A DNA stretch of 64,000 bases from Glycera tridactyla (GCA_965644265.1 OZ286463.1:19096001-19160000); one strand, 5' to 3'. Positions 20,301 to 64,000 are shown, numbered from the stretch's first letter. The notes: generated from the sequence alone by a model not told the origin. Numbers and translations are program-made.

Positions 20301-22255
20301 TACTATTATCTTTGTTGAAATGAGATCTCAGGTATGCACTGTAACACATGACACCTAGCGAACAAACAGGGTGGAAGTTGCCACTCCATGCAGCTGCAGC
20401 AAATCTCGATATGAGAGCAGCCTCTGCCGTTCAGATTGCGTGAATAAAGAAGTGTTCGTGAATAAAGAAGTGTTTATTATTATTTATTATTATTATTACA
20501 TGTATCGGGACTCAACATTGATATCCTCTCCCGTCACTCTTTTCTACATCATGATAGTATTTTGAGACTCAAGCGATCCATCTAGTGATTCTTTTTTGTA
20601 AGTGATCTAGCTAAAATATATCAGAATTTGAGAGGAAATTGAATTCAATTTTCATGCTATCTCTTGAAAATGCCATCCTACAGACAAATATATGTTATCG
20701 GAATTGCTGGAATGTATGATGAGGAATTGAACATGAGACACGCCTTGCTGTAACAGATGTCTGCTCGCAGGATACCAACAATCTACGTCCTACCTGTCTC
20801 TCTTCTCTCTACCTCTTTTCCCGTTCCCTCTTCCGAAACATGATGGGTGGTACGCCGGCATCACTATCTAGAATTATTGAAACTATGGAATTACCCGTCT
20901 CTCTTCTCTCTACCTCTTTTCCTGTTCCCACTTCAGAAACATGATGGGTGGTACGCCGGCATCACTATCTAGAATTATTGAAACTATGGAATTACCCGTC
21001 TCTCTTCTCTCTACCTCTTTTCCTGTTCCCACTTCAGAAACATGATGGGTGGTACGCCGGCATCACTATCTAGAATTATTGAAACTATGGAATTACCCGT
21101 CTCTCTTCTCTGTACCTCTTTTCCTGTTCCCACTTCAGAAACATGATGGGTGGTACGCCGGCATCACTATCTAGAATTATTGAAACTATGGAATTACCCG
21201 TCTCTCTTCTCTGTACCTCTTTTCCTGTTCCCACTTCAGAAACATGATGGGTGGTACGCTGGCATCATTATCTAGAATTATGGACACTATGGGATTTCAA
21301 TGTTGATAGTATTTCGCTGAACAGGAGTTTGAATATAGTTGGGTGAGAGAAGAAATATTGAGGTTTTACGTCCACTTCCTGCACTTGAGTAGGCTAAATC
21401 AGACCACCTGCCAAGGAGGAGTGAAGATGGAGGGTGAAACATTCCGGCATGGTAGGACTGGGGATTGAACCCCAGGCCAATTGCATGCCGGCCCAGCATG
21501 CTACCGCTGAGCCCAGCATGCTACCACTGAGCCACTGAGCCACCCAGTTGGGTGAGAATCAAACGTACCTGGGTGTTTGGATCAATTGTATCCACTGTCA
21601 TATCCAAAGTATCAAGCTCGATATGCTCACTGTTGATCAGGGTTTGGGAATCTTTCATCTTGTCATTCGCAAACCCATTCACTTTTGCCTCCTTTGGCTT
21701 TTTCTTTTTAGGTGCTTTGTGTTGCTTCGACTTCTCTTCTCTTCTTTTGGCGGCTTTACTCTGTAGTGTAGAAAGACTGACTTTTCGCTATAAAGAAAAT
21801 CAAATCACAGGTTGTTAGTAGCATCACCTCACTCAAGTCATTATGCTGACAGCACCTATCAGTATCTGACAGCATCTAACAGTTAAATACTGGGATGAAT
21901 CAGATTACGTCCTACATTGAGTGATTGGTAGCAATTTCGTACTGAACAACATCCTTCATTACGAATTTTGTAACAGAAATTCATAATTCTAATGTTCATA
22001 TCATGAGAATATCGACCAATCACGTTGATATATCTTTCATCGAGTGGGTGTTTTTATACTGTGTCTTGGATAACCTGTCGGCAGAAATTGCAACACTATT
22101 TTCCCAAAGGCCTATTTTGAATATCACAAGAGTAGACATTTTCTGTGAACAAACATCTGAGAATAGGTTCATGTCAAAGAATGTGTGTCGTTGATTTTAT
22201 TTCCCTATCTTATTTCACTGATATTGTTCTCGTGTGTTTGTGTGTGTGTGTATGT

Positions 22256-40200: not shown

Positions 40201-43200
40201 TGTCTGCCGGGGGCCGTCCCTACTCTTTGCGAAAGACAGCAGTGGATCTTTAACGTGCGTAAGGAAAAGGCTCCTAAATACACGGTCGGCCTTTGATATC
40301 CCAGTCGGCATGCACTGGGTTCTCTTATCGGGAATCACAGGATATAGAGCTGGCAATCGTTTACGTGTGAATATAGCAAGAATATATGGCTGTGAAGTAA
40401 AAACGCAATACCAAACGAGGTGTGAATTTTACCTGATGTCTCGAGGCCAAAGGCCGAGTGACATCCAGCCAAATTCAAACCGAGTTTGGTTTTGTGTTTT
40501 TACCTCACGGTCATATATTCTTGTTTTTATCACATGGATCAGGGGAGAAATCATCAGAAAGTAGTTCTCTCCCTGCTGTGAAGTATCACACGCAATACTC
40601 AACACCTGATACTTCTCTGAAAATGTCACATCCATGTGATAATATGCTGCTCTTGATAGTAGCTCTACTCTGAGTGTAAATGATCCATGACAGAAAGAGG
40701 ATCTTTAAGAGAAATTGACTTTTCAGCATGACAAAGCCTTCAGGAAGCACCCTTTACTGTTGAAAGAATTTCGACCACCAATATCTCCAACATCACTATA
40801 AATAACGTAGGAAGATGACATGCATGTAAAAGCACAGAGAGAAAGTAAATACATAACATAGTAGCTTTGATGCAAAATCTGGGAGTTAGAACACAGGTTC
40901 ACGTTTTGAATGCCTGAATATCATGCAAGTGGGAGAGATTTTTGGCTGTGAGGGTATTCCTTTAAATTGTTTGTTCGTGATAAAGCATGATATCAGTCAA
41001 AGCAATTTCACTCACAGTGCTTCACTGCAATACTAGGGAACGTACGACTGTCATCAAATGTGTTCTAACTGCCATTTCTCAGACACCTACATCTATGGCT
41101 TCAGTAACCATGGCAACAATGATGTCACCATACATACCATAAAAACATCAAACATACGACTCTGTCGACGAACATGATCCACAGCTTTCTTGGTCGGGTT
41201 TTTTGATAATGGTGCATTCAATAGAACAGATAGAAGAAAGATAACAGAAACAGGACACATAGACCGACACTATTGACATCATGCCGGCACCCTGGTCTAC
41301 GAGAGGGAATAACGATCAGGGATGTGGATAATGAATTAAAAAAAATCAAAAAGCTCAACATGCCTGAAATTGCTCGACAATAAGTTATGTCCTTTCATCG
41401 AGCAAGAAACATGATAATTTTGAAACTGATGAATGACGAAATCGAAGTTAAGAGTCATGATCTAAATTGATACAGCAATCATGACCGAATTATGGTAACG
41501 ATTAGATGTCATACAATGATTATGCAAACCGCTAGTAATTCTTCAGAATCTGGCATTTTTTCCCTGATTATCACCCATATCTTGTTTTAACAAGACTACA
41601 TGGGTAGGTTGAGATTGAACATAGCAACAAACGGCGAAGTGAGATATTCACTGTCATTCAGCGAAAATTTGCTTTTCCCGAGTGGACCTTGGATCTACCA
41701 TCATACATATTGACAAATGTGAGGCATGAATACATCAAACTATATCGAAAGACAGTGACATTTATGGACTAAACAATTAGAAAATACAAGGAAAATGGGA
41801 CGACTCAACAACCCATGCCATCACTGGAAGGAAAATATAATTCATAATCAAACAGCATGTGACAGACAAGCTATGATTATGAATACATTCCAGGATTTGG
41901 GTTAGGAAGGGTGGGTTTTTTGTGGGACTGATGACTTTTTTTTATAGATTTAACGGCATGTATCGACCCACAGGACTATTTATGCCGTGTGTTCCTGGTT
42001 AATGAAAGCTAGACGTTCTCTCCCCTGCAGACATCACTCTCACAGACCCTGAACACAAGATGATGGGGAACCTGAAAGGTTGTCAAGTGGAAGTAGTTGA
42101 CAGTTCAAACACACACTGATGACTGGACTGTGTCAAATCATCGGTAACATCAGATTATGCCACTGGAATATACTGCAAAACATTCACAGGTCACAACAAG
42201 GGTGGGATTTTTCAGGGACTGATGACTGGACTGTGTCAAATCATCGATAACATCAGATTATGCCACTGGAATATACTGCAAAACATTCACAGGTCACAAC
42301 GGGACAATTACAGAAAGACAAAGCACCAAATCAGAGGCTCCTATCCATGACCAACTAGCAACCACAACACCCAGAAAGGCAAATTGGTGTAGTTTTCAAG
42401 AGTGAAGGACTGGTGAAGGACTTGTGAACGGCCAGCAACAAAAAACGCAAAACCATTTACGAGATGCACTTTCAACCTGGTTCTGGTGAGTATCTATCCA
42501 TCAGTGACATGGTTCGATTAGCCTATTGATATCGATGTATTATGCTCAATCAATCACCATGGCCAATATCTGATTTCATCTGAGGAGATGTTGACAAAAG
42601 TGAGAATGTGGTTTCCAAAAGAATTACCCATGCACTTCGTGATCCACATAAGTTTTCTGGGTATTATATCAAATCAGTCACAATTATTGTCAATTTCGAG
42701 AACATTTATTTCGCAATCGATTACGGATAATTGAGATGAAACACAGGTCTACACTCCGTATGTTCAGTTGTTTTCAAGCAATTGTGATCTCTACATTGAA
42801 ATGTACTTTTTTGCTTCTGACTATATAAGACACAGTTCTACATGGAAAAGAGAAGTGATAACAAAAGTACGTTGCTATGAAACACATTGCAATGCATGTA
42901 CGATGTGGGAAAGTAAGATGTGGGGGCAAGCCATTGTGTCTTACCTTGGATGTGTGATGACGGCTTTCCCGTAATCGGTTTGTATTCCTGAGTTGTTCAA
43001 TCAGACCCTCCATGACCTGAAAGAGAGAAATGAATACAGTGAAATTGATGTGATGTATTCCTGAATTTTTCAATCAGACCCTCCATGACATGAAAGAGAG
43101 AAAAGAATACAGTGACATTGATGTGATGTATTCCTGAGTTGTTCAATCAGACCCTCCATGACCTGAAAGAGAGGAATGAATACAGTGACATTATTGTGAT

Positions 43201-46200
43201 GTATTCCTGAGTTGTTCAATCAGACCCTCCATGACCTGAAAGAGAGAAATGAATACAGTGACATTGATGTGATGTATTCCTGAGTTGTTCAATCAGACCC
43301 TCCATGACCAGAAACAGAGAAATAAATGCAGTGACATTGATGTGATGTATTCCCGAGTTGTTCAATCAGACCCTCCATGACCTGAAAGAGAGAAATGAAT
43401 ACAACAACATTGATGTGATGTATTCATGTCAGGGGATCAATTATAGCTTCTAAGAACCACACACTGCCATCCAAATATTACTATATCTATATATCCAAGC
43501 ATTCCCTATTTCACTGGTTGTCTTACATCACATGAGCACAATCTGTGCTATTTTTGAAACATCCATGCAAAGGGTATAGAAGTGATTATTCGAACCTTCT
43601 AGATGGATTATAAATGAAAAGTGAAAATGATCAAATTCAGACAGCCATAACGTCATCTCTGGTATTTCAGTCTTCGGATGTATTTGATTCTGTTCCTAAT
43701 ATATCTAATGATAGTTGAGATGTCATGACTGTTGGAATAGGTTGGCATGTCGTCTTCACCTATGGATCTTGTGTTTGCATGATGAGGCTTTGCAATGAAC
43801 AATAAAGTAACAAATGATACTCACGCTATTTGGCACAGTGGAGGAAGGAATGATGGCAGTGATACATGATATGATCCCTTTGAGGTGACTTGGATTGGAC
43901 ACAAGTGGAATGACTGCTTCGCAGAAACCCTGAATAAATGAAAAAAAAAAGATAACGTGAATTTGGAACAGATCCATACCATATTGCTGGCTATATTGAT
44001 GAAATATTTAGGGGACCACCTTCAGATATATCTGAACCAGTCTCTAACTGCAATAGAATACAAATGTCCCTGTGGTCTTCCAGGAAGTTCAGTTTCAATC
44101 TGGTATTCGTGAATCCATTTGAAGTTCTCGTCTCAATCGATTGAATGATAAGAGTAGCTCATAGGAATTTACATGCCGTAGAACCTGTATTCAGCAACCA
44201 CTGTATTCAGCAACCACCTGTCTCAAGCAGCCACTTTCTGTGGTGGTTGCTGATTACAGCTTCAACTGTATTCTTGGGAGGTTTTCATAGAGCAGGATGG
44301 TGTCCCATCAATATCCGAAACACTGACACATTCAACCTAATGTCTGTTGTTCTCATATAATTCCTGTAGTGCTATTTTGTACTTTCAAAATTGGAGGATA
44401 CACATATTTTGCATTGCATACATCCTTGATTGACTTGAAAAAACATACCACAAGTGCTCGTGCTAATTTGTCTGTGTTTTCCACTTCAGCAGGATACATA
44501 TCCTTCTCTGGAATGTAAAATTGGTTGAAAAATGCCTGCAAAATATAAACAGAGGTCACATCAATGACAAGCCATCATTCAGTATTTTTTTTCATCAGGT
44601 GATCATTTGAACAGCTTCAACGCACTGCAATATGTGCTCAGGTCATAGTGGCTCATGAAAAGTGATTCCCCATCTAATGTATTAACCGAGTAAAGAGGAG
44701 AAGGTTTTTCTCGCCCATAGTTTTGATCTGATGTTTGCAGGAAAAATGGTGTAAAAAGCATCACTGAATAGTATGATTGCTGCAGTCATCTCCACTTCTG
44801 ATAATTGTGCCCTCACTTTTGTCAAATTATATGAAATGAATCAACATATAAAAAGTAATAATTTCATTGAACGATGGGAAAAAAAAGAAATGTTAAGGTT
44901 TTAGGTCCACTTTCTGCACTTGAGTAGGCTAAATCAGACCACCTGCCAAGGAGGAGCGAAGATGAAAGGTGAAACATTCCTGCATGGTAGGACCAGGGAT
45001 TGAACCCCAGACCCATTGCACGCCGGCCCAGCATGCTACCACTGAACCACCAAGGTAGGCGAACCATGGGAACGAAGCCATGTAATCATCATGGGAGCAG
45101 AAAGTATGCTCGGTAGTATCGCTGCCCAAGATGCATTTTCTCAGTAAGAAACAGCATCGAGCATCGTCTCCACCATAGTGATACGTGTTTGGTAATATTT
45201 TGCCACGCCATGCATCAAGTATTGAAACATCATGGATGTAGAATAGCATCGTAGATATAGGCCTGAATCAATAAATCTCACTAGGCTGAAGGAATTCAAT
45301 AACGTGTCATCTCTAGTCATGAATGATGGGCCTCGAATTTTAATTTGAAAATTGTATTTACACTCTTACCTGTAGAATGGGCATGACAGTATCAAAGAAG
45401 TAATGCAATGTCACATGAGCCACACTTTCGACATCCTGTGGATCACTCACATCACTGAAAAAAAAAGCAATGACTTCCATATTCAGCAGACATGGTTGTC
45501 ATCTTTAGACTATGCTAAATCATACAACAACTTCGACTCTCACCATAAAGAGCTGTTACATTTGCACACCACTAATTGATGGAATGGCCTAAAATATCAT
45601 AAAATGACAGTAGGGATATGATTGTTGTATCCAGGTCTTCCATAGCCTGGTTTGGGTATATTATTCAATAATTATAAACCCACTCAAATTCCATACACAT
45701 CCATTCCATAAAGTCATTTCGGAAGTGAATTATTTGTATTGATATGAAACCACATCAAATCTGAAGCTAGGAGGTAGAGCAACATCCAATCCTGAGTGCA
45801 ATTCATCCAAAATCACGAATTCTCGATAGTAACAAGTATATTCGATTTACCATTTGTCTGGCGGTTTCTTTAGAAGATGCGTGGTGGTTTCCTGATTCTT
45901 AGAAATGTATTCGGTTAGGTCACATGCATCTCTTGCCACACTCTGTAGGAACTTCCATAGACTCCTGCAAAACGAACACACCATGTCAATCATTTTGATG
46001 TTTCAGGGATATCCTGCTGTTTCATTGAATGGTAACCCATCCTATTTGCATTTGGAAAGCTGTTTTAACTACGACGCCTCCCAAGTGAAATGAATGTTGG
46101 CTGAATGTGAGGATAAGGAATATCAAAAGTGGAGCAGTAATGGTTTGGTACTGAGTCAGATAGTACTTTCCCAGTGTTCAAACCATCCATTCTGTTTCCA

Positions 46201-55200: not shown

Positions 55201-58200
55201 AGGATGATCATTGGTGTATGTACCTCCAACATTGAATAAGCAGTATAGGATCAACGAGCTGAGGATTCGAGCATGCTTGTCAAACATATGTATTTTTAAG
55301 TGTCCACAACTAAAATGAAAAACCATAAGCTATGATTATGTTTTCTCCAACCTGCACTCGGGATCCACATGTATATATGTATGTATGTATGTATGTATGT
55401 GGAGGTCAACAGTTATTATGGTGTGAAGTATGGAGCATACACACTTACCATTGCCTGAACAGCCATTTTGAAGAGTTTGGTCTTGGATGAATAATACTTG
55501 TTGAGTAATGCTAAGGACTTGTTGATCATCTTGTCATACTTGTAGTTGGAAAGGTCCTGGAAATCAAAGTATTGATGAAATTATGATAGACCAATATTCT
55601 GCGAACATTCAGGCAGGATGACTCCTAGCAGATTCAATTGGACCTAGAAGCTGTGTATCCATGAGATAAGATGGTAGATTTTCCTTAGCGCCAACAGTTC
55701 CACTTCCAACTCGGCTAAATCTCCGGTACCACAGATGTGAATGATGATGATAATGATAGCAATTGTTGCTAAGAATGGCCAGCTCACCAATGTGCCATAT
55801 GGCCATCTCAAAGTAAGCCTAAATGCAGAGACATCCTATTTTCTCGTTTTCACTGTATTTGCTCAGTCAAACATGAGTACATGCACTGATTGCAGATACA
55901 AACTATTACAATATATGCGCCATCGTTTCTGACAATTGAGCCTCAAGTTATATATTGGAGATTTTGAGCAATCCGATGATAGTGACAGTGAGTATTAAGA
56001 ATTGAGTATCCAATATTTACCATGAGGATGGAAGTGATCTGTTCAGAATCAAAATAGGCCGTTGCATCAAACATTGCGCGCAAATCCTTCAGTGCTTTCT
56101 TCTGTAATTTCAGGCCTCTCCTGAAATGTATAACAAGATAATGATACAGAAAAATTCACATGATCAGTTGCAAGATAATGGTAAGACTTGGCCCATTCTC
56201 ATCAAATGGTTGTCATATAGATACCGTGATCTATGGTACTTGCGAAATATGAAGATATATTTGGATCATATGCATATCGAAATACATCAGGCTATTGATA
56301 CACTGCACTCCCAGAACTGGAGGAGAATGTGACCCTGTTACCTGTAGGCCCACTCTCATAGATGGCATAAATCCTCATACATCATCCAACTTGAAGTTGC
56401 TGCATATGCCAGTATATCACGAGGATGATTGTATTCGAGCTGTATCAATGTGAAAAGTGAGCTGATTCCCATGCCTGATTATAATGACTCATCCAAATAT
56501 CCAAAGACAATGCATCTGGTACTGGTGAACAGAGTGCATGCTAGGTAATCACAACCAAGTAGACACTTCGGAATCTAGGATCAAAACAAAGACCACTCTT
56601 GAAGGTGAACAGGGTACGTTTTTCTCTTTGTGAAAAAAATGTTTAGATTCTGCGCATCTAAACGCTGGAATACATTGGTTACAGGCCGGCCAGAAAGGGA
56701 AGTGATGAAAAGAGAACCATTCAAGGAATTTATGAAGGAGCTGCGTCATATAAGACTCTGACGATTATATATTATTATATACAAGACCTTTCATTCATTT
56801 CATCTATTCATTTTCATCTGATTCACCATCATTCAATCATCGCATTTGAATTTATGTAGCTTTTCATATCGTCTCCCTCGAAATGAACAATTTACCTTGC
56901 TGTATGATTGTTTAAATGCTTGTTGACGACGTTAGATAAAAGTTTTTCAATTTCAAATTCCAATGTGTTTTGACCAAGGATACCTCATGTTGCTTTCTTC
57001 ATTCTGAACCGATTACTCTTTACTGCTGTTCGATTCAAAGTTTTTTTCCGATGTTATGATGGAAATGAATTTTGATACAGATGATCAAATCACAAATTTA
57101 TCAAATTAGCTGTTAATTTATCTATTTAGTTATCAATCTAGTTACTATTGTCATTTCCATGATTGTGTATTTAGTGGTTGTCTTTATTGAGTTCTGAATC
57201 CCTGTAGTCATACCCTATAGAGAATGCTTAAATTATGTACTGGTTTCATTTATTGTCCAATGCTGTCATGTTTACTCTCAAAACAACTTGTTGATTTTTT
57301 TGTATGATCAAGTGGATTACTTAATTGATTATCTGCCAGCTAAAGTTCATGTATATCTTACGCTATGAATACCAAGGGTCGAATCCGGGTCATTCATTCA
57401 TTCATTCATCCTCATATCATCCATTATCATTCCATCCATTGTCATTTGTTGATACCATCCTCGCTCATACTATCGTAGTTGAGTATATGTTCATATCAAT
57501 TCGTCATCCTGAAGATGTATGCTCCTGTAGCAACCAAATGTCGAATAAAAATAATGTGTTAAAAATAAAAAAGCAAAACAGAATTCACAATTACATGCAT
57601 GATGGTATGATTACTTACTTGGACTGATCGAAGGGATCGAAGACCTCATACAGGAGCTCTGACAAGACACTCCGCTGTTTGGCCTTCTTGGCATTCGCTG
57701 TTGTCTCTGCTGTCTTGAATTTGGCAATAAAACTCTGAAATATTGCAAGTAGATTCTCTGATTGGTACATGCGACATCCATTATGGCGATTCCATTATGG
57801 TAGCGTAATTCTTACTGAAATGTTGGATATATGTTCAACATCATGTAGCATCTGATCCAAAGGTCATATTGCATGCATTCATAACGAATGGTCTTCATTC
57901 CAAATTTCAGTATTTGACGTTGGTTATTATCTCAGTGTTGCAGCTACTTCATCTATAGAAGATTGTGTGGATCCCCATTATTCAACCATGCCACTAAATA
58001 CTTGGAAAATAACATGATCAGGATCAGGTGCTGGCAAGGGACACACACATCCTTAATGCTACGGACCAATGACTATCACATTGGTATCGAAGGCTTAAGT
58101 TACGTGTGAGGGATTGCAAAGATTTCAAATATGTATTCTTTTTTTGAATATCATATATAGTGTATATCCACTTACCTCAAGGCGAGAATTGAATTGGAAC

Positions 58201-59123
58201 GTGAGAAGTAAATCAAGCACCTCCATAGCTCTGGAAGTCAAGGTCAAAGCTTAAATGAGCTATTATTTTTTTTACAATGAATGGAAACCTTCAACTTCAC
58301 CAGCACACTCATCGGCTATTCCCCACATTCCATGAACACTGCGAGTTATTCACTCTGACATGTAACTCCTTATTCGATCAGAATTGCCACAATAACGGAC
58401 AGTGAGATGAGATATGCCCAAACAAGCACTAGTTTCAGATTCCAGAATCATCGTGCCAAATACAGTGGACATTGGTTACTGGCGAGGGCATATTTTCGAT
58501 AACCATGCACTGAGAACATTGGTGTCAGATGCTCCTTGCATCCGCAGTACATGCGGTGAATATTCATTATAATATCCCCTTGGCTAGTGACATCCATGTT
58601 CTCAAAGAGGGATTTTGTATATCCAACATAGTTCTGAGTTGAGGATCGAATTACAAACCCTTGTATCATTCCTGTTCAATTTGTCACCTGCAGAGGATAG
58701 TAGTTACGCGGACAGCCTGGGAATTGGTATGCCTTTGTATGCTTTTGTAAGTCATTGAATAAATTCTATCATTTCCCAACTGGCAAGGATGATGAGCGAG
58801 CTCTACCGACATCTAAGGTAGCAAGTCAAACTCAGAATATATATCTTCAAAAAGTATTGACTCTTCAATTATAATCGCAAAGCCACGCCACTAGTGGGAC
58901 ACCCATGCCACAAATATAAGTATACTCTTAAAAAAGTATTGACTCTTCAATTATAATCGCAAAGCCACGCCACTAGTGGGAAGCCAATGCCCCGAATATA
59001 AGTATACTCTTAAAAAGTATTGACTCTTCAATTATAATCGCAAAGCCACGCCCATGCCCCGAATACAAGTATACTATACTTGTTCTTCTCACCTCCTGAA
59101 AGCAAATGAACTGATGCGAAAAT

Positions 59124-59159
<36 letters not shown>

Positions 59160-62100
59160 CCGTCATAAATGGAAATTTCACAACATACATGGCCACATAG
59201 AAGTGTGATACTTACTGGAATTTAGCATTGCAAATAGCCTTTATTTCTGGTTTCGTCTCATATCGATCCTTCAATCGGTATGCATTCACCACCTTCTGAG
59301 AATCTTTGGTGAATCCTAGAATAAGACATAAGACAATAATGATTGGTGGCTGGATAAGATAGCTCTTGTGGATGGGTGACTACTTCTTCATAAATGATGA
59401 GCGATGTTTGGTGAATCCTAGAATAAGACATAAGGCAATATTGATTGGTGGCTGGATAAGATAGTTTGTGTGAATGTGGGACTACTTCTTCATGAATGAT
59501 GAGCGATCTTTGGTGAATCCTAGAATAAGACATAAAGCAATATTGATGGGTGGCTGGATAAGATAGTTCTTGTGGATGGGGGACTACTCCTTCATAAATG
59601 ATGAGCGATCTTTGGTGAATCCTAGAATAAGACATAAAGCAATATTGATGGGTGGCTGGATAAGATAGTTCTTGTAGATGGGGGACTACTCCTTCATAAA
59701 TGATGAGCGATCTTTGGTGAATCCTAGAATAAGACATAAGGCAATATTGATTGGTGGCTGGATAAGATAGCTCTTGTGGATGGGTGACTACTTCTTCATA
59801 AATGATGAGCGATCTTTGGCGAATCCTAGAATAAGACATAAGGCAATATTGATTGGTGGCTGGATAGGATAGTTCTTGTGGATGGGGGACTACTCCTTCA
59901 TAAATGATGAGCGATCTTTGGTGAATCCTAGAATAAGACATAAAGCAATATTGATGGGTGGCTGGATAAGATAGTTTGTGTGAATGTGGGACTACTTCTT
60001 CATAAATGATGAGCGATCTTTGGTGAATCCTAGAATAAGACATAAAGCAATATTGATGGGTGGCTGGATAAGATAGTTCTTGTGGATGGGGGACTACTCC
60101 TTCATAAATGATGAGCGATCTTTGGTGAATCCTAGAATAAGACATAAAGCAATATTGATGGGTGGCTGGATAAGATAGTTCTTGTAGATGGGGGCCTACT
60201 CCTTCATAAATGATGAGCGATCTTTGGTGAATCCTAGAATAAGACATAAGGCAATATTGATTGGTGGCTGGATAAGATAGCTCTTGTGGATGGGTGACTA
60301 CTTCTTCATAAATGATGAGCGATCTTTGGCGAATCCTAGAATAAGACATAAGGCAATATTGATTGGTGGCTGGATAAGATAGTTCTTGTGGATGGGGGAC
60401 TACTCCTTCATAAATGATGAGCGATCTTTGGTGAATCCTAGAATAAGACATAAAGCAATATTGATGGGTGGCTGGATAAGATAGTTCTTGTAGATGGGGG
60501 CCTACTCCTTCATAAATGATGAGCGATCTTTGGTGAATCCTAGAATAAGACATAAAGCAATATTGATGGGTGGCTAGATAAGATAGTTTGTGTGAAAGGG
60601 GGACTACTTCTTCATAAATGATGAGCGATCTTTGTTGAATCCTAGAATAAGACATAAGGCAATATTGATTGTTGGGTGGATAAGATAGTTCTTGTGGATG
60701 GGTGACTACCTCTCCATAAATGATGAGCGAAACACAAATTCTGGGTCAAGTGAATAGCAAACAATCATCTGAATTGCAAATGCTTGCACTATTACCAGCA
60801 ATCATTTTTCATCTGTCACTTAAAACAATAAAGCAGACCAAGAACCATGTAATTGATGCTAATGAATGCTCACCTCCTTTCTCGTTGTCTGGAGGGAATG
60901 GTTTGTCATTCTTGCCATTCAAGAGATTCAGCAAGGGCTTCAGTAGAGACTTTATATCATCGCTGCCATAGTATCCGAATTTCACCAAAAAATGGAATAA
61001 TCGTAGAACCTGTCAAATGGAAAAAGTAATGATATGCATGATGAGCCATATATTGTGAAACAGTCGGTATACCAACTGATCCATGACATAGTAAACATCT
61101 TATCTTTCTTTCTTTGTTTGAGGTTCAACGGCATGTATCAACCCGTGGGTTATGTATGCCGTGTGTTCCTGGTTAATGGAAGCTAGGTGTTCTCTCCCCT
61201 GCAGAAATCACTCTCACAAACCCTGAACACAAGTTGATGGGGAACCTGAAAGGTTATCAAGAGGAAGTAGCTGACAGTTCAGACACACCTCTACCTAATC
61301 TGAACACACATAATAAACCTTTGATGGCATATCTGACTATGTAGCTGGCTGGAAGCTAACACTCAAGCCTGATAGCAATGCTTTTTTTTCGTAAACATCT
61401 TACATTTAAGCGATATCATCTGCAGATGGATTTATATCACACAGGATTATGTATGTCGAGTGTTCCTACAAGGTAGCTGGCTGTTCTGTCTCCATCAGCA
61501 TCCCTCTATCGTCCTCTGAACGCAAAGCGATAGAGGGGTGCTCAACAGGGAGCAGCTGACTGATGCATCTGGATTGAGGACATTGCCAGAAATGTGATAA
61601 TGCTTTATGTTTGGGTAATTAATCAAATGCTCACTTTGAGCTTTTGAATTCAAACGGGCATTACAATAATTTGTTCAATGATCAGTGCAATGCCATTGCA
61701 AAACCTAGCACACCAAGGTCCCGATCACAGTTCACGAGAACTGTTGTTCATGATACCTGTTTTGTGCATAGTAATAATATTGATGCGGACAAAACATGAG
61801 ACCATTTCATAGCACAGTTAGGGCGGTCCGAATAAATAGAGGAGATATGAAGGAAAAAGTATATTTTGATAATGTAGACATAAGTAGAGAATTTCTCAAG
61901 CTATAATCTCTCAAGACAGACGCCAAAGAATTCAGATCCTATTTGACACCCAAGAACGTTTTCTGAGAAAATGAGGAAAGGTCAGATGTAGGCCACCTGG
62001 CCCATACCCATATGTGGTTGCCATCTGAACGGACCCTACACTCAAACTATACACATCCCACGTATCTGAGCTAGGGGAGAGATGAAGTTCTACTAGCATC

Positions 62101-62506
62101 ACCCATTGCTAACAAGAACACGCTAGGCTCATGTTTCCCAAGAAGCTTGTTCGAGAGATAAGAGTTTGTTTGTTTGAGGGTCAACGGCATGTATCAACCC
62201 ATGGGTTATGTATGCCATGTGTTCCTGGTTGATGAAAGCTAGATGTTCTCTTCCCTGCAGACATCACTCTCACAAACCCTGAAACACAAGTTGATGGGGA
62301 ACCTGAAAGGCTGTCAAGTGGAAGTAGCTGACAGTTCAGACACACCTCTACCTAATCTGAACATACATAATAGAGACAAGAGTAATTACCTGTTCTATGA
62401 GCATGTTGCGACCGATCATCGTCCCTGTCATATCACGATTCTCTTCGAGGAATTCAGCTATCCAGTCACGTATCACGGGAAATAATGTCACAAGATCCTT
62501 GATGAT
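2713..62506 (-). CDS. ITPR: Multi-exon inositol 1,4,5-trisphosphate receptor family (ITPR-like) Ca2+ release channel gene, internal part, 32 exons
   Basis: 32 AG/GT-bounded exons join in one frame (3925 nt, every phase compatible). Peptides such as VLRLFHFLVKFGYY, LVLRVLARMCDGQHEGLQDYLREQ, SFNIVAETAQF, QLFETLNEF and EVGFTYYLILARL align by eye to ITPR central and RIH-associated regions. The gene continues beyond both window ends. Confidence 0.92.
4310..5077 (+). mobile_element. pearl/HINE-like non-autonomous element (Helitron/Helentron-associated type)
   Basis: Starts aactagagctttgtcacagaggtgac...tataccc. Ends with an (ACCG/ACCA)n microsatellite, gtgactccagtataccccc and a terminal hairpin. 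This architecture is known from DINE-1/pearl-like repeats. Family assignment is from recall. Confidence 0.6.
8260..8338. repeat. (TA)n microsatellite
   Basis: Near-perfect TA run. Confidence 0.97.
8381..8520. other. Assembly gap (140 N)
   Basis: Run of n. Confidence 1.
9754..9876 (-). CDS. ITPR: ITPR-like exon 31 (poorly conserved, possibly cassette)
   Basis: aattgcag|...|gtgagt, 123 nt, phase 0-0, PDRPKIDIPVRKSGTNLNIGMTLQSAKNLAKMGKNMLAGSM. Supported by splice sites and frame only. Confidence 0.68.
10479..10547 (-). CDS. ITPR: ITPR-like exon 30
   Basis: atttcag|...|gtaggt, 69 nt, phase 0-0, EIKDTLDKEALYRCMCGCYESTQ. Confidence 0.87.
12320..12570. repeat. 84-bp tandem repeat x3
   Basis: tgtgttctacacaggtacagg at 12344, 12428 and 12512. 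Confidence 0.92.
13912..14098 (-). mobile_element. tRNA-derived SINE, family A copy 1
   Basis: Minus strand has a tRNA-like head with A box tggctcagtggtag and B box-like ggcttcatccc, and a (CATTT)n tail. 12-bp TSD with 1 mismatch: tcaaaatggaga 13900-13911 and tcaagatggaga 14099-14110. Confidence 0.85.
14488..14611 (-). mobile_element. SINE family A copy 2, 5'-truncated
   Basis: Lacks most of the tRNA head. Perfect 13-bp TSD ctacccatatatg at 14475-14487 and 14612-14624. Confidence 0.88.
15019..15206 (-). mobile_element. SINE family A copy 3
   Basis: Full length with A and B boxes and a (CATTT)4 tail. No clear TSD. Confidence 0.85.
16200..16283 (-). CDS. ITPR: ITPR-like exon 29
   Basis: cgttgcag|...|gtaggt, 84 nt, phase 0-0, VLTLKQSIGNLLITLIEENSPESLQVAR. 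Confidence 0.9.
16719..16820 (-). CDS. ITPR: ITPR-like exon 28
   Basis: tcttacag|...|gtatgt, 102 nt, phase 0-0, GNQANRYVLLNSKIVDYINFILRAGEFKKCPSEK. Confidence 0.92.
17057..19144. repeat. 140-bp tandem array, about 15 copies
   Basis: atgttcgagtatcattcaatt recurs at about 140-bp spacing (17096, 17236, 17379, 17519 ... 18913). The array ends 28 nt from the exon 27 donor. Confidence 0.97.
19173..19322 (-). CDS. ITPR: ITPR-like exon 27 (RIH-associated domain)
   Basis: gtttgcag|...|gtctgt (weak donor), 150 nt, phase 0-0, DYLREQPDNMKSFNIVAETAQFVNLVYSNINPQTIDLIIQLFETLNEFTV. Confidence 0.92.
19869..20042 (-). CDS. ITPR: ITPR-like exon 26 (start of RIH-associated domain)
   Basis: ttttctag|...|gtaagc, 174 nt, phase 0-0, VAKLATKSKEAKENK...DDGYIELVLRVLARMCDGQHEGLQ. 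Confidence 0.93.
20796..21290. repeat. 101-bp tandem array x5
   Basis: catgatgggtggtacg at 20839, 20940, 21041, 21142 and 21243. Confidence 0.95.
21349..21545 (-). mobile_element. SINE family A copy 4
   Basis: A and B boxes with a locally duplicated head. Perfect 12-bp TSD agttgggtgaga at 21337-21348 and 21546-21557. Confidence 0.87.
21569..21760 (-). CDS. ITPR: ITPR-like exon 25 (Lys-rich linker)
   Basis: actacag|...|gtacgt, 192 nt, phase 0-0, SKAAKRREEKSKQHKAPKKKKPKEAKVNGFANDKMKDSQTLINSEHIELDTLDMTVDTIDPNTQ. Low complexity, so support is splice sites and frame rather than homology. Confidence 0.78.
22232..22301. repeat. (TG)n microsatellite
   Basis: TG run with a few TA interruptions. Confidence 0.95.
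22886..23928 (+). mobile_element. pearl/HINE-like element with internal core repeats
   Basis: Starts aactagg. Internal diverged subrepeats (cca-gtacaaattggccactg). Ends with (GACAGACG)n and the hairpin tagggc...gcccta. Confidence 0.55.
24691..25035. repeat. 43-bp tandem array x8
   Basis: catgaacttaagcacaacactgcatgtgtgcacagaaaatggt repeated. Confidence 0.95.
26571..26811 (-). mobile_element. Fold-back non-autonomous element, family D copy 1
   Basis: Reverse-complement homolog of 40369-40643, with an internal inverted repeat. Confidence 0.7.
28551..28650 (-). CDS. ITPR: ITPR-like exon 24
   Basis: atttgcag|...|gtaatg, 100 nt, phase 2-0, RSLAAQQRARQKEALAQTKSMQNSISIGKKAIQ. Confidence 0.87.
29155..29252 (-). 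CDS. ITPR: ITPR-like exon 23
   Basis: tttttcag|...|gtaagc, 98 nt, phase 0-2, SSLLYYFLHTREESFFAAIRARMHLSALAIKE(R). Confidence 0.92.
29452..29932. repeat. 53-bp tandem array x9, nearly invariant
   Basis: aatgtgtgttatcgtgactcatgggatgaaacctttaccaagaaccatatata repeated. I saw only one variant base. Confidence 0.97.
30311..30467 (-). CDS. ITPR: ITPR-like exon 22
   Basis: tctttcag|...|gtaagt, 157 nt, phase 2-0, QVQLVRDLQIELNDMGAVIMVLPHLARPSDRIAKEVLAFVCIMLFNANAKVQ. Confidence 0.92.
30615..32346. mobile_element. GC-rich TIR element (MITE-like) flanked by TTAA, containing a nested LINE fragment
   Basis: Left end ttaa|gccacccttacataggcacggcacctgct. Right end read as reverse complement is ttaa|gcagcccttacataggcccggcacctgct. 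TTAA at 30611-30614 and 32347-32350. Confidence 0.82.
30905..31985 (+). mobile_element. 5'-truncated non-LTR retrotransposon (CR1/L2-like) 3' fragment with reverse transcriptase ORF remnant (about 30904-31661)
   Basis: Open frame with GVPQGSILGPLLFVIFINDL, MYADDT, NKLTVNTKKTKWM and FKYSGVWLD, then an AT-rich 3' UTR, aataaa and a (tttgaa)-like tail. No endonuclease or RT N-terminal part. Confidence 0.9.
32514..32672 (-). CDS. ITPR: ITPR-like exon 21
   Basis: atttcag|...|gtaagt, 159 nt, phase 2-2, ISSNMQRFLTSENARLEQEELDIRCLQLLRAVIHNEERKLPEDWEENPQDHK. Confidence 0.92.
32729..33046. repeat. About 106-bp tandem array x3
   Basis: acaagg(c/t)ctc at 32731, 32837 and 32944. Fills most of the intron between exons 20 and 21. 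Confidence 0.92.
33170..33308 (-). CDS. ITPR: ITPR-like exon 20
   Basis: gtttgcag|...|gtgagt, 139 nt, phase 1-2, (E)YTTIGGDDELPLGEEFQEHLKRFVRPSEKKVIKKIELVKKIVEQL(R). Confidence 0.9.
33446..33634 (-). mobile_element. Retroposed repeat family B copy 1
   Basis: Minus-strand 3' end is the hairpin ggcat...aacccacgggtt...atgcc, then gttaaacct and a (CAAA)n tail. Homologous to five other copies. Confidence 0.85.
34378..34702 (-). mobile_element. SINE family C copy 1 with Deu/Nin-domain-like core
   Basis: Minus strand gcacgtaaaagatcc...aaagagtagggg...ccccgg resembles the Deu/Nin SINE core as I recall it. (CAAT)n tail. 12-bp TSD with 1 mismatch at 34366-34377 and 34703-34714. Confidence 0.7.
38261..38390 (-). 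CDS. ITPR: ITPR-like exon 19
   Basis: gtcaacag|...|gtaggt, 130 nt, phase 0-1, GHKEYYQGELELNAKLRTFAVNCSLLYGGHNNVQAQLKFKSKR. Confidence 0.9.
40111..40320 (-). mobile_element. SINE family C copy 2 with Deu/Nin-domain-like core
   Basis: gcacgttaaagatcc...aaagagtaggg core and (CAAA)n tail. Perfect 12-bp TSD tctcttatcggg at 40099-40110 and 40321-40332. Confidence 0.75.
40369..40643 (+). mobile_element. Fold-back non-autonomous element, family D copy 2
   Basis: 40-bp inverted arms at 40377-40416 and 40484-40523 (35/40 complementary). Homologous to 26571-26811. Confidence 0.72.
41937..42114 (-). mobile_element. Retroposed repeat family B copy 2
   Basis: A-rich tail. 10-bp TSD actgatgact at 41927-41936 and 42115-42124. 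Confidence 0.85.
42115..42300. repeat. About 103-bp tandem duplication
   Basis: actgatgactggactgtgtcaaatcatc...cacaggtcacaac occurs twice. Confidence 0.88.
42945..43016 (-). CDS. ITPR: ITPR-like exon 18
   Basis: tctctttcag|...|gtaaga, 72 nt, phase 0-0, VMEGLIEQLRNTNRLRESRHHTSK. Confidence 0.82.
42981..43425. repeat. 73-bp tandem array x6 overlapping the exon 18 acceptor
   Basis: catgac at 43011, 43084, 43157, 43230, 43303 and 43376. Unit is 37 nt of intron plus 36 nt of exon. Confidence 0.95.
43825..43929 (-). CDS. ITPR: ITPR-like exon 17
   Basis: ttattcag|...|gtgagt, 105 nt, phase 0-0, GFCEAVIPLVSNPSHLKGIISCITAIIPSSTVPNS. Confidence 0.85.
44449..44535 (-). CDS. ITPR: ITPR-like exon 16
   Basis: ttttgcag|...|gtatgt, 87 nt, phase 0-0, AFFNQFYIPEKDMYPAEVENTDKLARALV. 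Confidence 0.88.
44881..45060 (-). mobile_element. SINE family A copy 5
   Basis: A and B boxes. 12-bp TSD with 1 mismatch: gaacgatgggaa 44869-44880 and gaaccatgggaa 45061-45072. Confidence 0.87.
45370..45454 (-). CDS. ITPR: ITPR-like exon 15
   Basis: tttttcag|...|gtaaga, 85 nt, phase 2-0, DVSDPQDVESVAHVTLHYFFDTVMPILQ. Confidence 0.87.
45851..45964 (-). CDS. ITPR: ITPR-like exon 14
   Basis: ttttgcag|...|gtaaat, 114 nt, phase 2-2, SLWKFLQSVARDACDLTEYISKNQETTTHLLKKPPDK. Confidence 0.88.
46235..46439 (-). mobile_element. Retroposed repeat family B copy 3
   Basis: Flanked by a 115-bp direct duplication at 46120-46234 and 46440-46554. Confidence 0.85.
46742..46860 (-). mobile_element. Retroposed repeat family B copy 4 (lacks the 3' hairpin)
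   Basis: Perfect 16-bp TSD tgccaataatagatgt at 46726-46741 and 46861-46876. Confidence 0.85.
46884..47071 (-). CDS. ITPR: ITPR-like exon 13
   Basis: gctacag|...|gtaatt, 188 nt, phase 0-2, GENRFIESMCQTIMGVEELMWVMNHDDIDCNLKRPFLRYFLWVYMKTAGSAVESGAGDLPHD. Confidence 0.93.
47153..47334 (-). mobile_element. SINE family A copy 6
   Basis: A and B boxes. Perfect 12-bp TSD tgtagcagatgg at 47141-47152 and 47335-47346. Confidence 0.87.
47803..48126 (-). CDS. ITPR: ITPR-like exon 12
   Basis: ttttgcag|...|gtacag, 324 nt, phase 0-0, AFIGNQSTCLKV...PEFLDLLNVIVKVEG...YLISLIDLLATCAE. Confidence 0.94.
49053..49214 (-). CDS. ITPR: ITPR-like exon 11
   Basis: tttatcag|...|gtaagt, 162 nt, phase 0-0, EQYRGMEEVLKKSLKLLKALARGNDVVQVRMFERLDTLLKIKVVESDLAIALKE. 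Confidence 0.93.
49518..49630 (+). mobile_element. 3' end fragment of a pearl/HINE-like element
   Basis: (GACC/GACT)n microsatellite then gtgactccactata...aaacttcatttg...ggggggta, like 4970-5077. Confidence 0.5.
51777..51832 (-). CDS. ITPR: ITPR-like exon 10
   Basis: atttcag|...|gtaagc, 56 nt, phase 1-0, (E)LLTLVFDILSQEIDAKLM. Confidence 0.87.
51869..52563. repeat. 99-bp tandem array x7
   Basis: gtaactgacatgatttctcataagc at 51869, 51968, 52067 and onward. Produces the spurious 33-aa-periodic ORF 51818-52483. Confidence 0.96.
52574..53258. repeat. 76-bp GT-rich tandem array x9
   Basis: ggacgtgtgta at 52620, 52696, 52772 and onward. Abuts the 99-bp array. Confidence 0.95.
53601..53668 (-). 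CDS. ITPR: ITPR-like exon 9
   Basis: ctccctag|...|gtgagt, 68 nt, phase 2-1, FCHLPKEEHERHPMNQNILINH. Confidence 0.88.
54112..54422. repeat. 128-bp tandem repeat x2.4
   Basis: gatattcatg at 54114, 54242 and 54370. Confidence 0.9.
54547..54683 (-). CDS. ITPR: ITPR-like exon 8
   Basis: gtctcag|...|gttagt, 137 nt, phase 0-2, VLITTDSCHVHREIARTMPILRRHAKSKLNDDQVKTMSSVLDRYT(E). Confidence 0.88.
55449..55556 (-). CDS. ITPR: ITPR-like exon 7
   Basis: tttccag|...|gtaagt, 108 nt, phase 0-0, DLSNYKYDKMINKSLALLNKYYSSKTKLFKMAVQAM. Confidence 0.92.
56021..56120 (-). CDS. ITPR: ITPR-like exon 6
   Basis: atttcag|...|gtaaat, 100 nt, phase 2-0, RGLKLQKKALKDLRAMFDATAYFDSEQITSILM. Confidence 0.88.
57619..57734 (-). 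CDS. ITPR: ITPR-like exon 5
   Basis: atttcag|...|gtaagt, 116 nt, phase 0-2, SFIAKFKTAETTANAKKAKQRSVLSELLYEVFDPFDQS(K). Confidence 0.88.
58176..58230 (-). CDS. ITPR: ITPR-like exon 4
   Basis: cttccag|...|gtaagt, 55 nt, phase 2-0, AMEVLDLLLTFQFNSRLE. Confidence 0.9.
58848..59073. repeat. About 82-bp tandem repeat x2.8
   Basis: aagtattgactcttcaattataatcgc at 58852, 58934 and 59015. Confidence 0.9.
59126..59156. repeat. (CA)n microsatellite
   Basis: Perfect CA run. Confidence 0.95.
59216..59315 (-). CDS. ITPR: ITPR-like exon 3
   Basis: ttattctag|...|gtaagt, 100 nt, phase 1-2, (G)FTKDSQKVVNAYRLKDRYETKPEIKAICNAKF(Q). Confidence 0.88.
59301..60730. repeat. 102-bp tandem array x14 overlapping the exon 3 acceptor
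   Basis: gaatcctagaataagacata at 59311, 59413 ... 60637. Produces the spurious 465-aa periodic ORF. Confidence 0.97.
60874..61009 (-). CDS. ITPR: ITPR-like exon 2
   Basis: tttgacag|...|gtgagc, 136 nt, phase 0-1, VLRLFHFLVKFGYYGSDDIKSLLKPLLNLLNGKNDKPFPPDNEKG. Confidence 0.92.
61103..61390 (-). mobile_element. Retroposed repeat family B copy 5 (longest)
   Basis: Perfect 12-bp TSD gtaaacatctta at 61091-61102 and 61391-61402. Confidence 0.87.
62166..62371 (-). mobile_element. Retroposed repeat family B copy 6
   Basis: 12-bp TSD with 1 mismatch: agagataagagt 62154-62165 and agagacaagagt 62372-62383. Confidence 0.85.
62390..62506 (-). CDS. ITPR: ITPR-like exon 1 in window
   Basis: ttacctag|...|gtaatt, 117 nt, phase 0-0, IIKDLVTLFPVIRDWIAEFLEENRDMTGTMIGRNMLIEQ. 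Confidence 0.88.
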
Positions 62507-64000
62507 CTAGGTAATTTCAACAAAAATATTCAATCACTTGGCATTCGATGTTCAAATGTTTTCTCATAACCTTCTCCATCATTCTTCGATCTGTGAGTGA
62601 AATCGTTATCTATAGGGAATCGAATTATCGATCGCTGATTTCTGAAGTATCATTCACACAGAAAAAACTTTATCATACTATATCAACATTCTACAATAAA
62701 GCAGCCTTTGTGCATGCCAGAATTTTCAGCATCAAAATTTGGATTGTACACAGAGGAAAGCAGATGTCAAATGATTTTTCCGTATGGGCTTCTTTTTCTA
62801 TCCAATAGTCGGTTGTCATATGGAACGTCCTTGTAGAAAACTGAATAGGGATATGTGTGCCGGAGGTGGGATCTTGAGATCAAGATATGGGAGAACATAT
62901 TCAAATTATGATGTGGTATGTGGGCAAGAAAATGTCTGCATTGGAGAGTGCAATGATAGGTGTGTGTGCGGTAATGTGAGTGAGTATATATGTAATGTAC
63001 ATAAATTTACATGGAAGATTTGTAGAGGTCACGCGGCGGATATTGCATGAAATGATTTGGAATAAGAATCGGATGTAAGAATCGAATGTAAGCAGAATCC
63101 TATCTAGTTTCCTGATAGTGACAGCTAAATCGAATGATCCTTTACTCAGAACCAGATTTGGGTTTGTTATTTGCATCATTCTCATCATGGCTTTGTCTAC
63201 ATGGCTAATAAAATGTGCGTGCCAACTCTCCCTTTCATGATGTCAAGAAAATAATGACAAGTATTAATCAGTATCAATTCAGCTTCAATTTGATAATACA
63301 ACACATGCTTATAATCATATACCACAATATATGCACTCAACTGAGAGAGGTGGGTTAACGTCAGGGCAAATACTCAAATGAAATGATTGATCCGGAAATT
63401 CGCTGCGAACCCAGACAAATACATACACATAAACATAGGCACAAACACAGATACAAAGCTTTACAAGTAACTCATTTATCTAGTGACCGTTAGTTCAACA
63501 GTAATTGGCAACAGGGTATATATTGATGAGAATGTAACATATTTCATGGCACTGAAACCACCAGGTCGACCATTCAGAATACAGCAGAAGATATGTGGAA
63601 GATGCCTGAGCTTCCAGCATAATGAAAGCTGACACGAACGAGAGGCCATTTTTTCTATTGAAGGAAACAGTGGATGAAACTCGGGGATATGTAGTGAATG
63701 AATATTTTGCAAATATATGTGAATTATTTCAAAAACAAAAATTGCAATTGTTTCATGCTTCATCCTTCTCACATCTGAAGATGTTGAGGCATTATGATCC
63801 TCACGTTAGGAATATATCTACCGTAGATATATGAAGATCAAAGCCATCCTCTTCAAAGATGCATGATTTCAATGTAGAAGACTTTAACAGATAAAGAAGG
63901 CAATTCAATATTTCTGGAGGCACTTATGTCTACCTGCTCACGTCATGCAATTACCCTGCCCAGATGTTGTGTTTTAAACTTACAAACTTATAAAATCATA

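What the first reader, a model, noticed from the sequence alone, without database searches (positions are those of the whole stretch)
59301..60730. 102-bp array stacks 14 copies of the exon 3 splice acceptor, each decoy leading to a stop
Every unit contains tatgtcttattctag|gattc(a/g)(c/a)caaagat, the real acceptor plus the first 14 exon nt. Thirteen intact decoy 3' splice sites therefore precede the true one and fill about 92% of the intron. The unit is a multiple of 3, and the in-frame reading after a decoy is (G)FTKDRSSFMK(E/K)-TAG, so any decoy use is unproductive. Variants recur at 510-bp and 306-bp spacing (5-mer and 3-mer block duplications), which indicates ongoing turnover. With the exon 18 array this is a repeated pattern in one gene. 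Inference: these could be copy-number-variable splice-site arrays that tune channel expression through NMD, or a natural test of exon definition.
Basis: partly seen in the sequence, partly recalled or inferred. Interest (0 to 1): 0.7.

Follow-up and report, generated by a model that had tools for sequence, protein, structure and literature searches.

The report
Splice-acceptor "mirage" minisatellite in channel intron
A 102-base piece covering the end of an intron and the first 14 bases of the next exon of an IP3-receptor-like channel gene has been copied 14 times in a row. This leaves 13 spare splice acceptors, but assembled transcripts use only the genuine last one, so this is another example of an already described repeat type ("mirage" minisatellite) with no sign of a regulatory role.

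Summary
TRF finds 14.0 copies of a 102-bp unit at 59302-60730. Every unit carries the 3' splice site plus 14 exon bases, and all 13 decoys run into TAG after 12 codons.

The gene is a minus-strand RyR/IP3R-superfamily member (RIH_assoc hit in the window; ITPR3 match). It starts upstream of the window, so "exon 3" is only the third exon in the window. Four paralogs have the homologous exon with the acceptor at the same codon position.

Transcript contigs from public runs join exon 2 (ending at 60874) directly to the last acceptor (59315) and continue in frame through two further exons. No contig shows decoy use, though contigs cannot exclude rare NMD-degraded forms.

The unit occurs nowhere else in the 2.04-Gb genome, so the array grew from the junction itself. 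Identical units at 306- and 510-bp spacing show recent block duplication.

This is the "mirage" minisatellite known from amphioxus genes, with donor-side equivalents in human F7, IFI6 and CBS. The scan has already noted at least 21 such arrays on other DNA of this genome. I found two more in the closest paralog, one at this same junction.

Two junction-spanning arrays among 15 in the window is about what chance predicts (about 1.6). NMD tuning is untested and unsupported.

The parts
59302..60730 (-). 102-bp x 14.0 minisatellite. Each unit is 88 nt of intron 3' end (branch-point-like cttat, pyrimidine tract, AG) plus the first 14 nt of the exon. U1 lies nearest the donor; U14 holds the true acceptor.
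   Evidence: TRF; units in register; motif search finds 14 hits at exact 102-bp steps; the unit is found only at this locus in the genome
59316..60873 (-). Intron between window exons 2 and 3 (1558 nt, GT...AG). 90.8% of it is array; a 143-nt unique stretch follows the donor.
   Evidence: removed precisely in transcript contig X2 record 8
60874..61009 (-). Window exon 2 (136 nt, ends in phase 1). Its donor GAG|GTGAGC is the best donor-like site in the region (9.9 bits).
   Evidence: 60-71% identical to four paralogs; contigs X1 record 2 and X2 record 8; donor score
59216..59315 (-). Window exon 3 (100 nt), the genuine exon. Acceptor AG at 59317-59316; donor CCA|GTAAGT at 59215.
   Evidence: Homologous exon with the acceptor at the same codon position and phase in four paralogs; present in contigs of X2, X3 and X4
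59417..60641 (-). The 13 decoy acceptors. The first exon-like base falls at 60641, 60539, ... 59417 in steps of 102. Each leads to TAG after 12 codons.
58176..58230 (-). Window exon 4 (55 nt, cttccag|...|gtaagt). It keeps the frame open after exon 3.
   Evidence: Paralog tblastx; exact 55-nt gap in contig X2 record 8; boundaries and frame
57619..57734 (-). Window exon 5
   Evidence: contigs X1 record 1 and X2 record 8; open frame
62390..62507 (-). Window exon 1, joined to exon 2 in transcripts. Its upstream end is not determined.
   Evidence: contigs X1 record 2, X2 record 13, X3 record 21; paralog tblastx
42981..43425 (-). Second acceptor-type array in the same gene: 73 bp x 6.1. The unit is 37 nt of intron end plus 36 nt of a putative 72-nt exon (42945-43016). 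AG is lost in 2 of 6 decoys.
   Evidence: TRF; register print. The exon rests on splice signals only: no paralog match and no RNA check.
19176..19349 (-). Exon matching Pfam RIH_assoc (PF08454, 50 bits, over cut-off). It identifies the gene as a RyR/IP3R-superfamily member.
   Evidence: also window 47803-48123(-) against human ITPR3 residues 1265-1374, E 1.2e-5

Best explanation
This is a locus-born 'mirage' minisatellite. A 102-bp segment spanning the last 88 nt of the intron and the first 14 nt of the exon was tandemly duplicated. It then expanded by unequal exchange or slippage, most recently in 3-unit and 5-unit blocks, to 14 copies. The array is a tolerated by-product of the high minisatellite activity of this genome, not a regulatory device. 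Splicing still pairs the exon-2 donor with the last acceptor. The likely reason (inferred) is that only that copy is followed by the complete 100-nt exon and, right behind it, a good 5' splice site, so it alone is fixed by exon definition. The units contain no usable donor. A decoy could therefore only produce an over-long exon with a stop 12 codons in, which nonsense-mediated decay would be expected to remove.

Shown: the array anatomy; its uniqueness to this locus; the reality of the exon and its acceptor; use of the last acceptor in assembled transcripts; the lack of donors in the units; recent block duplications.

Inferred: exon definition as the selecting mechanism; NMD clearance of rare errors; neutrality.
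For: The array and its 14 acceptors are confirmed. The unit matches nowhere else in the 2.04-Gb genome, so the repeat derives from the junction and not the reverse. The acceptor position and phase are conserved in four paralogs. Contig X2 record 8 reads 60961..60873 | 59314..59216 | 55 nt | 57734..57618. That is exon 2 joined to the true acceptor, with the frame open through exons 4 and 5. X3 record 14 and X4 record 22 also carry exon 3 with non-array flanks, and X1-X3 have zero contig depth across 59437-60605. Donor-like sites inside the units score at most 3.8 bits, against 9.9 and 7.1 for the two real donors. Units are identical at 306 and 510 bp spacing, and the edge unit U1 is the most divergent, as described for mirage clusters in PMC3087553. 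The exon-derived 14 nt of the decoys vary at 3 of 14 columns against 24 of 102 overall, so they show no coding constraint. In the sister array, 2 of 6 decoy AGs have decayed. The same repeat type is published with undisturbed splicing (PMC3087553, PMC3902484, PMC1557585). The closest paralog carries two further examples.
Against: Contigs show the dominant form only. Rare or NMD-degraded decoy products would not be assembled, so 'never used' is not shown. One small X4 contig lies within the array (bin 60439-60605, depth 0.53). Its nature is unknown: pre-mRNA, DNA or a decoy product. The acceptor core (-16..+5) is invariant in all 14 units, a little more than chance predicts (P about 0.04, uncorrected). 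U13's decoy lies only 202 nt from the exon-3 donor and each decoy is followed by a purine-rich GAAGAAG/GAAGGAG stretch, so simple exon definition does not obviously exclude the nearest decoys. Copy-number polymorphism and neutrality were not tested.
Confidence: 0.8

Rival explanations
1. Regulated unproductive splicing. A fraction of transcripts splice to decoys, acquire a stop and are degraded by NMD, so array length sets the channel's expression level.
For: All 13 decoys are intact and have the same acceptor core as the true site, and the core is slightly less variable than expected (P about 0.04). Every decoy gives a stop after 12 codons, well upstream of later junctions. One X4 contig contains array sequence. 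In human IFI6 and CBS, donor-side pseudo-sites nearest the real site are used at some level (PMC1557585).
Against: No contig in four runs joins exon 2 to a decoy, and three runs show the productive join or exon 3 with non-array flanks. The sister array has lost 2 of 6 decoy AGs. Three of four paralogs have no decoy at this junction. Junction-spanning arrays are no more frequent in the window than chance placement predicts (about 1.6 expected, 2 seen). Published mirages do not disturb splicing (PMC3087553, PMC3902484).
Confidence: 0.07
2. Long-lived, possibly ancestral mirage. The duplication of this particular acceptor predates the split from the closest paralog and has persisted by concerted evolution, which would hint at a benefit or a local duplication hotspot.
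For: The closest paralog (C11:116.33 Mb) has a decoy copy of the homologous acceptor 73 nt upstream, plus a partial copy. The duplicated exon part ends 16 nt into the exon, against 14 nt here.
Against: The intronic parts of the two units share no similarity and the unit lengths differ (about 50 against 102 bp). Mirages are frequent in this gene family: a further 67-bp x 7.7 array sits at another junction of the same paralog. Independent hits on one junction are therefore not very improbable; my rough estimate is 1-5% after allowing for four paralogs examined. The other three paralogs lack it.
Confidence: 0.07
3. Assembly artefact. The array, or its copy number, is a mis-assembly of a shorter repeat.
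For: No DNA reads could be laid on it: only four small transcript-type runs were offered. A mirage in the amphioxus draft genome was reported as mis-assembled (PMC3087553).
Against: The units differ at 24 columns in an ordered higher-order pattern with exact 102-bp register and no indels, which collapse or expansion artefacts rarely produce. Both flanks are confirmed by transcripts. The same kind of array recurs at other loci.
Confidence: 0.04
4. Raw material for intron or exon birth. A decoy's exon-like part could become a new mini-exon, or the array a new intron, as proposed for amphioxus globins.
For: The model is published for the same repeat type (PMC3087553). The unit length is a multiple of 3 and one frame is open through the whole array.
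Against: The units have no usable 5' splice site. The frame that continues from exon 2 hits a stop in every unit. No transcript contig contains unit sequence joined to exons.
Confidence: 0.02

Closest known systems
'Mirage' minisatellites of amphioxus (Adh3, globins BflGb6/BflGb9, troponin C, PGBD5)
   Same: Tandem repeats whose unit spans an exon-intron boundary, so the splice signal and a piece of exon are reiterated. The authentic copy lies at the exon-side end of the array. Regular splicing is retained. Units evolve in concert and the edge units diverge. BflGb6 is the same acceptor-type arrangement: intron 3' end plus exon 5' part, 150-160-bp units (PMC3087553; PMC3902484).
   Different: The host genome is different: 2.04 Gb, which by my own knowledge is not the size of a Branchiostoma genome. 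The organism is coded, and other agents' notes call it annelid-like; I did not test this. There are more copies (14 against 3-6 in BflGb6). Allelic or somatic length variation, shown for Adh3 and BflGb6, could not be tested here.
Human donor-side junction minisatellites: F7 IVS7 37-bp VNTR, IFI6 (6-16) intron 2, CBS IVS13, LMNB2, PDGF
   Same: The first or last monomer spans the exon-intron boundary, so identical pseudo-splice sites are stacked in the intron. The site adjoining the real exon is the one used, either only or mainly (PMC1557585).
   Different: Those arrays repeat 5' splice sites and the most upstream copy wins. Here 3' splice sites are repeated and the most downstream copy wins. 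In both cases it is the copy attached to the exon.
Regulated unproductive splicing (poison exons or alternative sites coupled to NMD)
   Same: Use of any decoy would introduce a premature stop and should trigger NMD.
   Different: The defining evidence is absent: no observed use of the alternative site and no conservation of the alternative event. Three of four paralogs lack it, and decoys decay in the sister array.
NAGNAG tandem acceptors
   Same: Adjacent competing 3' splice sites created by duplication of the acceptor.
   Different: NAGNAG sites are 3 nt apart, share one branch point and tract, and give in-frame single-codon variants. Here the sites are 102 nt apart, each has its own tract, and use would be out of service through a stop.

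Membership tests
Mirage minisatellite (exon-intron-boundary tandem repeat) | Minisatellite-type head-to-tail array (unit about 10-160 bp) | tested here: met
   102 bp x 14.0, 93% matches, no indels
Mirage minisatellite (exon-intron-boundary tandem repeat) | The unit spans a real exon-intron boundary and so reiterates the splice signal plus part of the exon | tested here: met
   Each unit is 88 nt of intron end with AG plus 14 nt of exon. The exon and acceptor are validated by four paralogs and by transcript contigs.
Mirage minisatellite (exon-intron-boundary tandem repeat) | The authentic junction is the terminal copy adjoining the exon, and the repeat is of local origin | tested here: met
   U14 continues into unique exon sequence. 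The unit is found nowhere else in the genome.
Mirage minisatellite (exon-intron-boundary tandem repeat) | Regular splicing is not disturbed | tested here: met
   Contigs join 60874 to 59315 and stay in frame. Limitation: contigs show the dominant form only.
Mirage minisatellite (exon-intron-boundary tandem repeat) | Length instability (allelic or somatic copy-number variation) | not testable with these tools
   No DNA run of this organism was offered. There is only indirect evidence, from identical units at 306/510-bp spacing.
Regulated unproductive splicing / NMD switch | The alternative (decoy) site is demonstrably used | tested here: inconclusive
   No exon-2-to-decoy join appears among the listed contigs of four runs. 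One unexplained small array-containing contig is present in X4. Raw reads and NMD-inhibited samples were not available.
Regulated unproductive splicing / NMD switch | The alternative event is conserved or under constraint | tested here: not met
   It is absent at this junction in 3 of 4 paralogs. In the sister array 2 of 6 decoy AGs are lost. The invariance of the acceptor core is only marginal, P about 0.04.
RyR/IP3R channel superfamily (host gene) | RIH and RIH_assoc domains | tested here: met
   PF08454 scores 50 bits at window 19176-19349(-). PF01365 scores 28.8 bits on the same strand 27 kb upstream. There is an ITPR3 match at E 1.2e-5. The pore domain was not examined.

The most novel reading that the evidence does not exclude
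Decoy acceptors are used at a low, array-length-dependent rate, or they slow commitment of the intron. If so, this and the many other junction arrays of this genome would act as heritable, fast-mutating dials on gene output. Recurrence at the same junction in the closest paralog would then reflect long-term retention and not coincidence.
Probability: 0.06. Interest if true: 0.65.

Novelty: new member of a known kind. Interest (0 to 1): 0.25.

Why it matters
On its own this matters little. It is one more junction-spanning minisatellite in a genome where the scan has already flagged many, and the repeat type is in the literature.

Its modest value is as a clean natural experiment. Thirteen acceptors with the same core as the real one lie between the donor and the real site, the first only about 230 nt from the donor, and yet the fourteenth is chosen. 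That argues against simple 5'-to-3' 'first acceptor wins' selection and for selection through the downstream exon in this animal. It mirrors the donor-side F7 case.

Taken together, the density of such arrays in this genome would make a good system for measuring how often splice-site duplications are tolerated. It could also show whether they seed new introns or exons.

Tried and rejected
1. Pfam and PDB searches with single short exons (46, 32, 64 aa) gave nothing. Only the 107-aa exon and the family-versus-genome searches identified the gene.

2. I tested whether the unit belongs to a dispersed satellite or transposon that donated the acceptor. Rejected: it matches only this locus.

3. Rfam over 57500-62600 gave no RNA family.

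4. A plus-strand gene in the array was rejected: there is no open frame there. The 495-codon open frame on the minus strand is a trivial result of a stop-free frame in a unit of 3n length.

5. Recursive or stepwise splicing through the decoys was rejected. Exon-2 end plus GATTC does not regenerate a donor, and the units lack donors.

6. I tried to fetch whole paralog genes to build a full exon map and a proper enrichment test. The chance estimate therefore rests on an approximate exon count.

7. The putative 24-aa exon behind the 73-bp array found no paralog match, so that exon stays unverified.

Exons were searched one by one by reference, and reading-frame continuity was checked exon by exon.

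9. The N run at 8381-8520 was left untouched.

Full report
**Observation.** Tandem Repeats Finder reports one array at 59302-60730 with period 102, 14.0 copies, 93% matches, no indels and score 2452. Printed in register on the minus strand, each of the 14 units ends with the pyrimidine tract, the AG and then gattc plus nine more bases that equal the start of the exon. A motif search from -20 to +14 finds 14 hits at exact 102-bp steps with at most 2 mismatches.

The last copy continues into unique exon sequence. The other 13 continue into the next unit. In the phase inherited from the upstream exon, each of those reads twelve codons and then TAG. The intron is 59316-60873 (1558 nt) and the array fills 90.8% of it.

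**Gene and exon.**
- The gene runs on the minus strand.
- A 107-aa exon (window 47803-48123) aligns to human ITPR3 residues 1265-1374 (E 1.2e-5).
- Pfam RIH_assoc matches window 19176-19349 at 50 bits.
- RYDR_ITPR matches the same strand 27 kb upstream of the window.
- The host is thus a RyR/IP3R-superfamily gene that begins outside the window, and 'exon 3' is a window number only.
- The genome (2.04 Gb, 207 contigs) holds at least five further relatives.
- In four of them I located the homologues of window exons 2 and 3. In all four, the acceptor of the exon-3 homologue lies at the same codon position and phase. The exon and its acceptor are real.

**RNA.** Only four small runs from two studies were offered. 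Their contigs skip introns at GT-AG borders, so they are transcript assemblies.
- Contig X2 record 8 (384 nt) lies on 60961..60873, then 59314..59216, then has 55 unlisted letters, then 57734..57618.
- The 55 letters equal an exon at 58176-58230 with good splice signals, and the frame stays open across all four exons.
- X3 record 14 and X4 record 22 also carry exon 3 with flanks that are not array.
- X1 record 2 joins window exon 1 to exon 2.
- Contig depth across 59437-60605 is zero in X1-X3.
- X4 has one small contig within the array (bin 60439-60605) whose details were not shown. Array words are 14 times more abundant than unique intron words, so sparse pre-mRNA reads could suffice to assemble it. 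This is conjecture.
- Contigs show presence, not absence. The dominant mRNA uses the true, last acceptor, and rare decoy use cannot be excluded.

**Anatomy and history of the array.**
- A 306-bp piece of it matches nowhere else in the genome. The repeat therefore arose from the junction and did not donate it.
- Units U3 and U6 are identical, as are U5 and U10, and U7 and U12. U4/U9 and U6/U11 differ by one base.
- Mean mismatch is lowest at a lag of five units (4.1 against 6.5 for neighbours). The unit nearest the donor, U1, is the most divergent.
- This is the usual picture of unequal exchange with less homogenised edges, as described for amphioxus globin mirages (PMC3087553).
- The 14 exon-derived bases of the decoys vary at 3 of 14 columns, like the unit as a whole (24 of 102). 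They are under no coding constraint.
- The acceptor core from -16 to +5 is invariant in all units. The longest invariant run (21 columns) has P about 0.04 under random placement, and the 23-nt acceptor window has 2 variable columns where 5.4 are expected (P 0.045). These figures are uncorrected and the units are not independent, so I treat this as a weak hint only.

**Is the pattern in this gene more than chance?**
- The second array (42981-43425, 73 bp x 6.1) does duplicate an acceptor plus 36 nt of a putative 72-nt exon, and two of its six decoy AGs are destroyed. That exon has no paralog match and no RNA check.
- The window holds 15 arrays of period 30 or more, covering about 13% of it.
- I assumed roughly 40 exons, extrapolated from eight exons in 8.9 kb, and units of about 85 bp. 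A randomly placed seed duplication then spans a junction about 10% of the time.
- That gives about 1.6 expected junction-spanning arrays, and two are seen.
- Four other arrays end 28-55 nt from a splice site without overlapping it.

**Paralogs.** In the sequence I held, the closest paralog has a decoy copy of the homologous exon-3 acceptor 73 nt upstream, plus a partial copy. Its exon part is 16 nt long, against 14 nt here. At another junction, the acceptor of the exon homologous to window 47803-48125, the same paralog has a 67-bp x 7.7 acceptor array with all AGs intact. Such arrays are thus common in this family. The coincidence at one junction may be chance (my rough estimate is 1-5%) or shared ancestry. 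I could not decide between them.

**Mechanism.** A crude donor matrix shows that the two real donors are the best donor-like sites between 61020 and 59150 (9.9 and 7.1 bits). Nothing inside the units exceeds 3.8 bits. A decoy therefore cannot define a small exon of its own. It could only yield an over-long exon ending at the exon-3 donor and carrying a stop.

The most likely account (inferred) is exon definition. The last acceptor is the only copy followed by the full 100-nt exon and its donor. Rare errors would be NMD substrates. The account is incomplete: the nearest decoy is only 202 nt from that donor, and each decoy is followed by a purine-rich stretch, so why U13 is not used is not explained by sequence alone.

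**What is known.** Tandem repeats spanning exon-intron boundaries were named 'mirages' in amphioxus Adh3. They are reported in globin (BflGb6 is acceptor-type), troponin C and PGBD5 genes, with regular splicing retained and allelic length variation (PMC3087553; PMC3902484). Human F7 IVS7, IFI6, CBS, LMNB2 and PDGF carry donor-side equivalents in which the site attached to the exon is used (PMC1557585).

Other agents of this scan have filed at least 21 findings of this type on other DNA of this same genome. Those notes gave me the name and the first paper, which I then read myself. Their claims about genome-wide frequency and about the animal's lineage were not tested here.

**Limits.**
- There were no DNA reads, so the copy number and its variability rest on the assembly.
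- There were no raw RNA reads, so minor isoforms are invisible.
- The N run at 8381-8520 was left alone.

**Verdict.** It is a new member of a known repeat kind, it most likely has no function, and the regulatory reading is unsupported but not excluded.

Noticed in passing
L008:1729-2242 (G000 C11, about 116.2568-116.2573 Mb, minus-strand gene): The closest paralog has a 67-bp x 7.7 acceptor-type array. Each unit is ...gacttgcag plus the first 27 nt of the exon homologous to window 47803-48125, with 7 intact decoys before the real acceptor.
   Followed up: partly
L022:8700-8800 (G000 C11, about 116.3303 Mb, minus strand): The closest paralog carries a small duplication of the acceptor homologous to the one studied here: a full decoy at -73 and a partial one at -23. 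The duplicated exon part is 16 nt long, against 14 nt in the window. It is unclear whether this is coincidence or shared origin.
   Followed up: partly
window 42981-43425: A 73-bp x 6.1 array copies an acceptor plus 36 nt of a putative 72-nt exon (42945-43016). Two of six decoys have lost the AG (cTG, cAT). The exon is not found in paralogs and was not checked with RNA.
   Followed up: partly
window 20791-21296: A 101-bp x 5 array whose unit contains a 55-nt segment bounded by ttctag| and |gtagag, that is, acceptor-like and donor-like signals within one unit. It lies between two coding-looking exons (21524-21787 and 19869-20042). It is not known whether any copy is an exon.
   Followed up: no
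window 61100-61400 and 62150-62390: Two copies of a short interspersed repeat, also present in the paralogs' introns. It attracts thousands of transcript contigs with summed depths above 100,000 in all four runs, so the family is very abundant and expressed.
   Followed up: no
window 17057-19146, 2587-2684, 32729-33046, 51869-52565: Four more minisatellites end 28-55 nt from a likely splice site without overlapping it. The 140-bp x 15 array starts about 40 nt after the donor of the RIH_assoc exon. Overall, 15 arrays of period 30 or more cover about 13% of the window, a far higher density than in the roughly 76 kb of paralog sequence examined.
   Followed up: partly
G000 C11, C34, C17, C4: The genome holds an expanded set of divergent IP3R-like genes. 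At least five on C11 and C34 share this gene's exon structure. There are also two loci with much stronger RIH/RIH_assoc matches (C17 about 72.8-73.0 Mb, C4 about 99.0-99.1 Mb) that may be the canonical IP3R and RyR.
   Followed up: no
window 59261-60745 (minus strand): A 495-codon open frame runs through the whole array in a frame other than the one continuing from exon 2. It is explained by a stop-free frame in a unit of 3n length and shows no sign of coding.
   Followed up: partly
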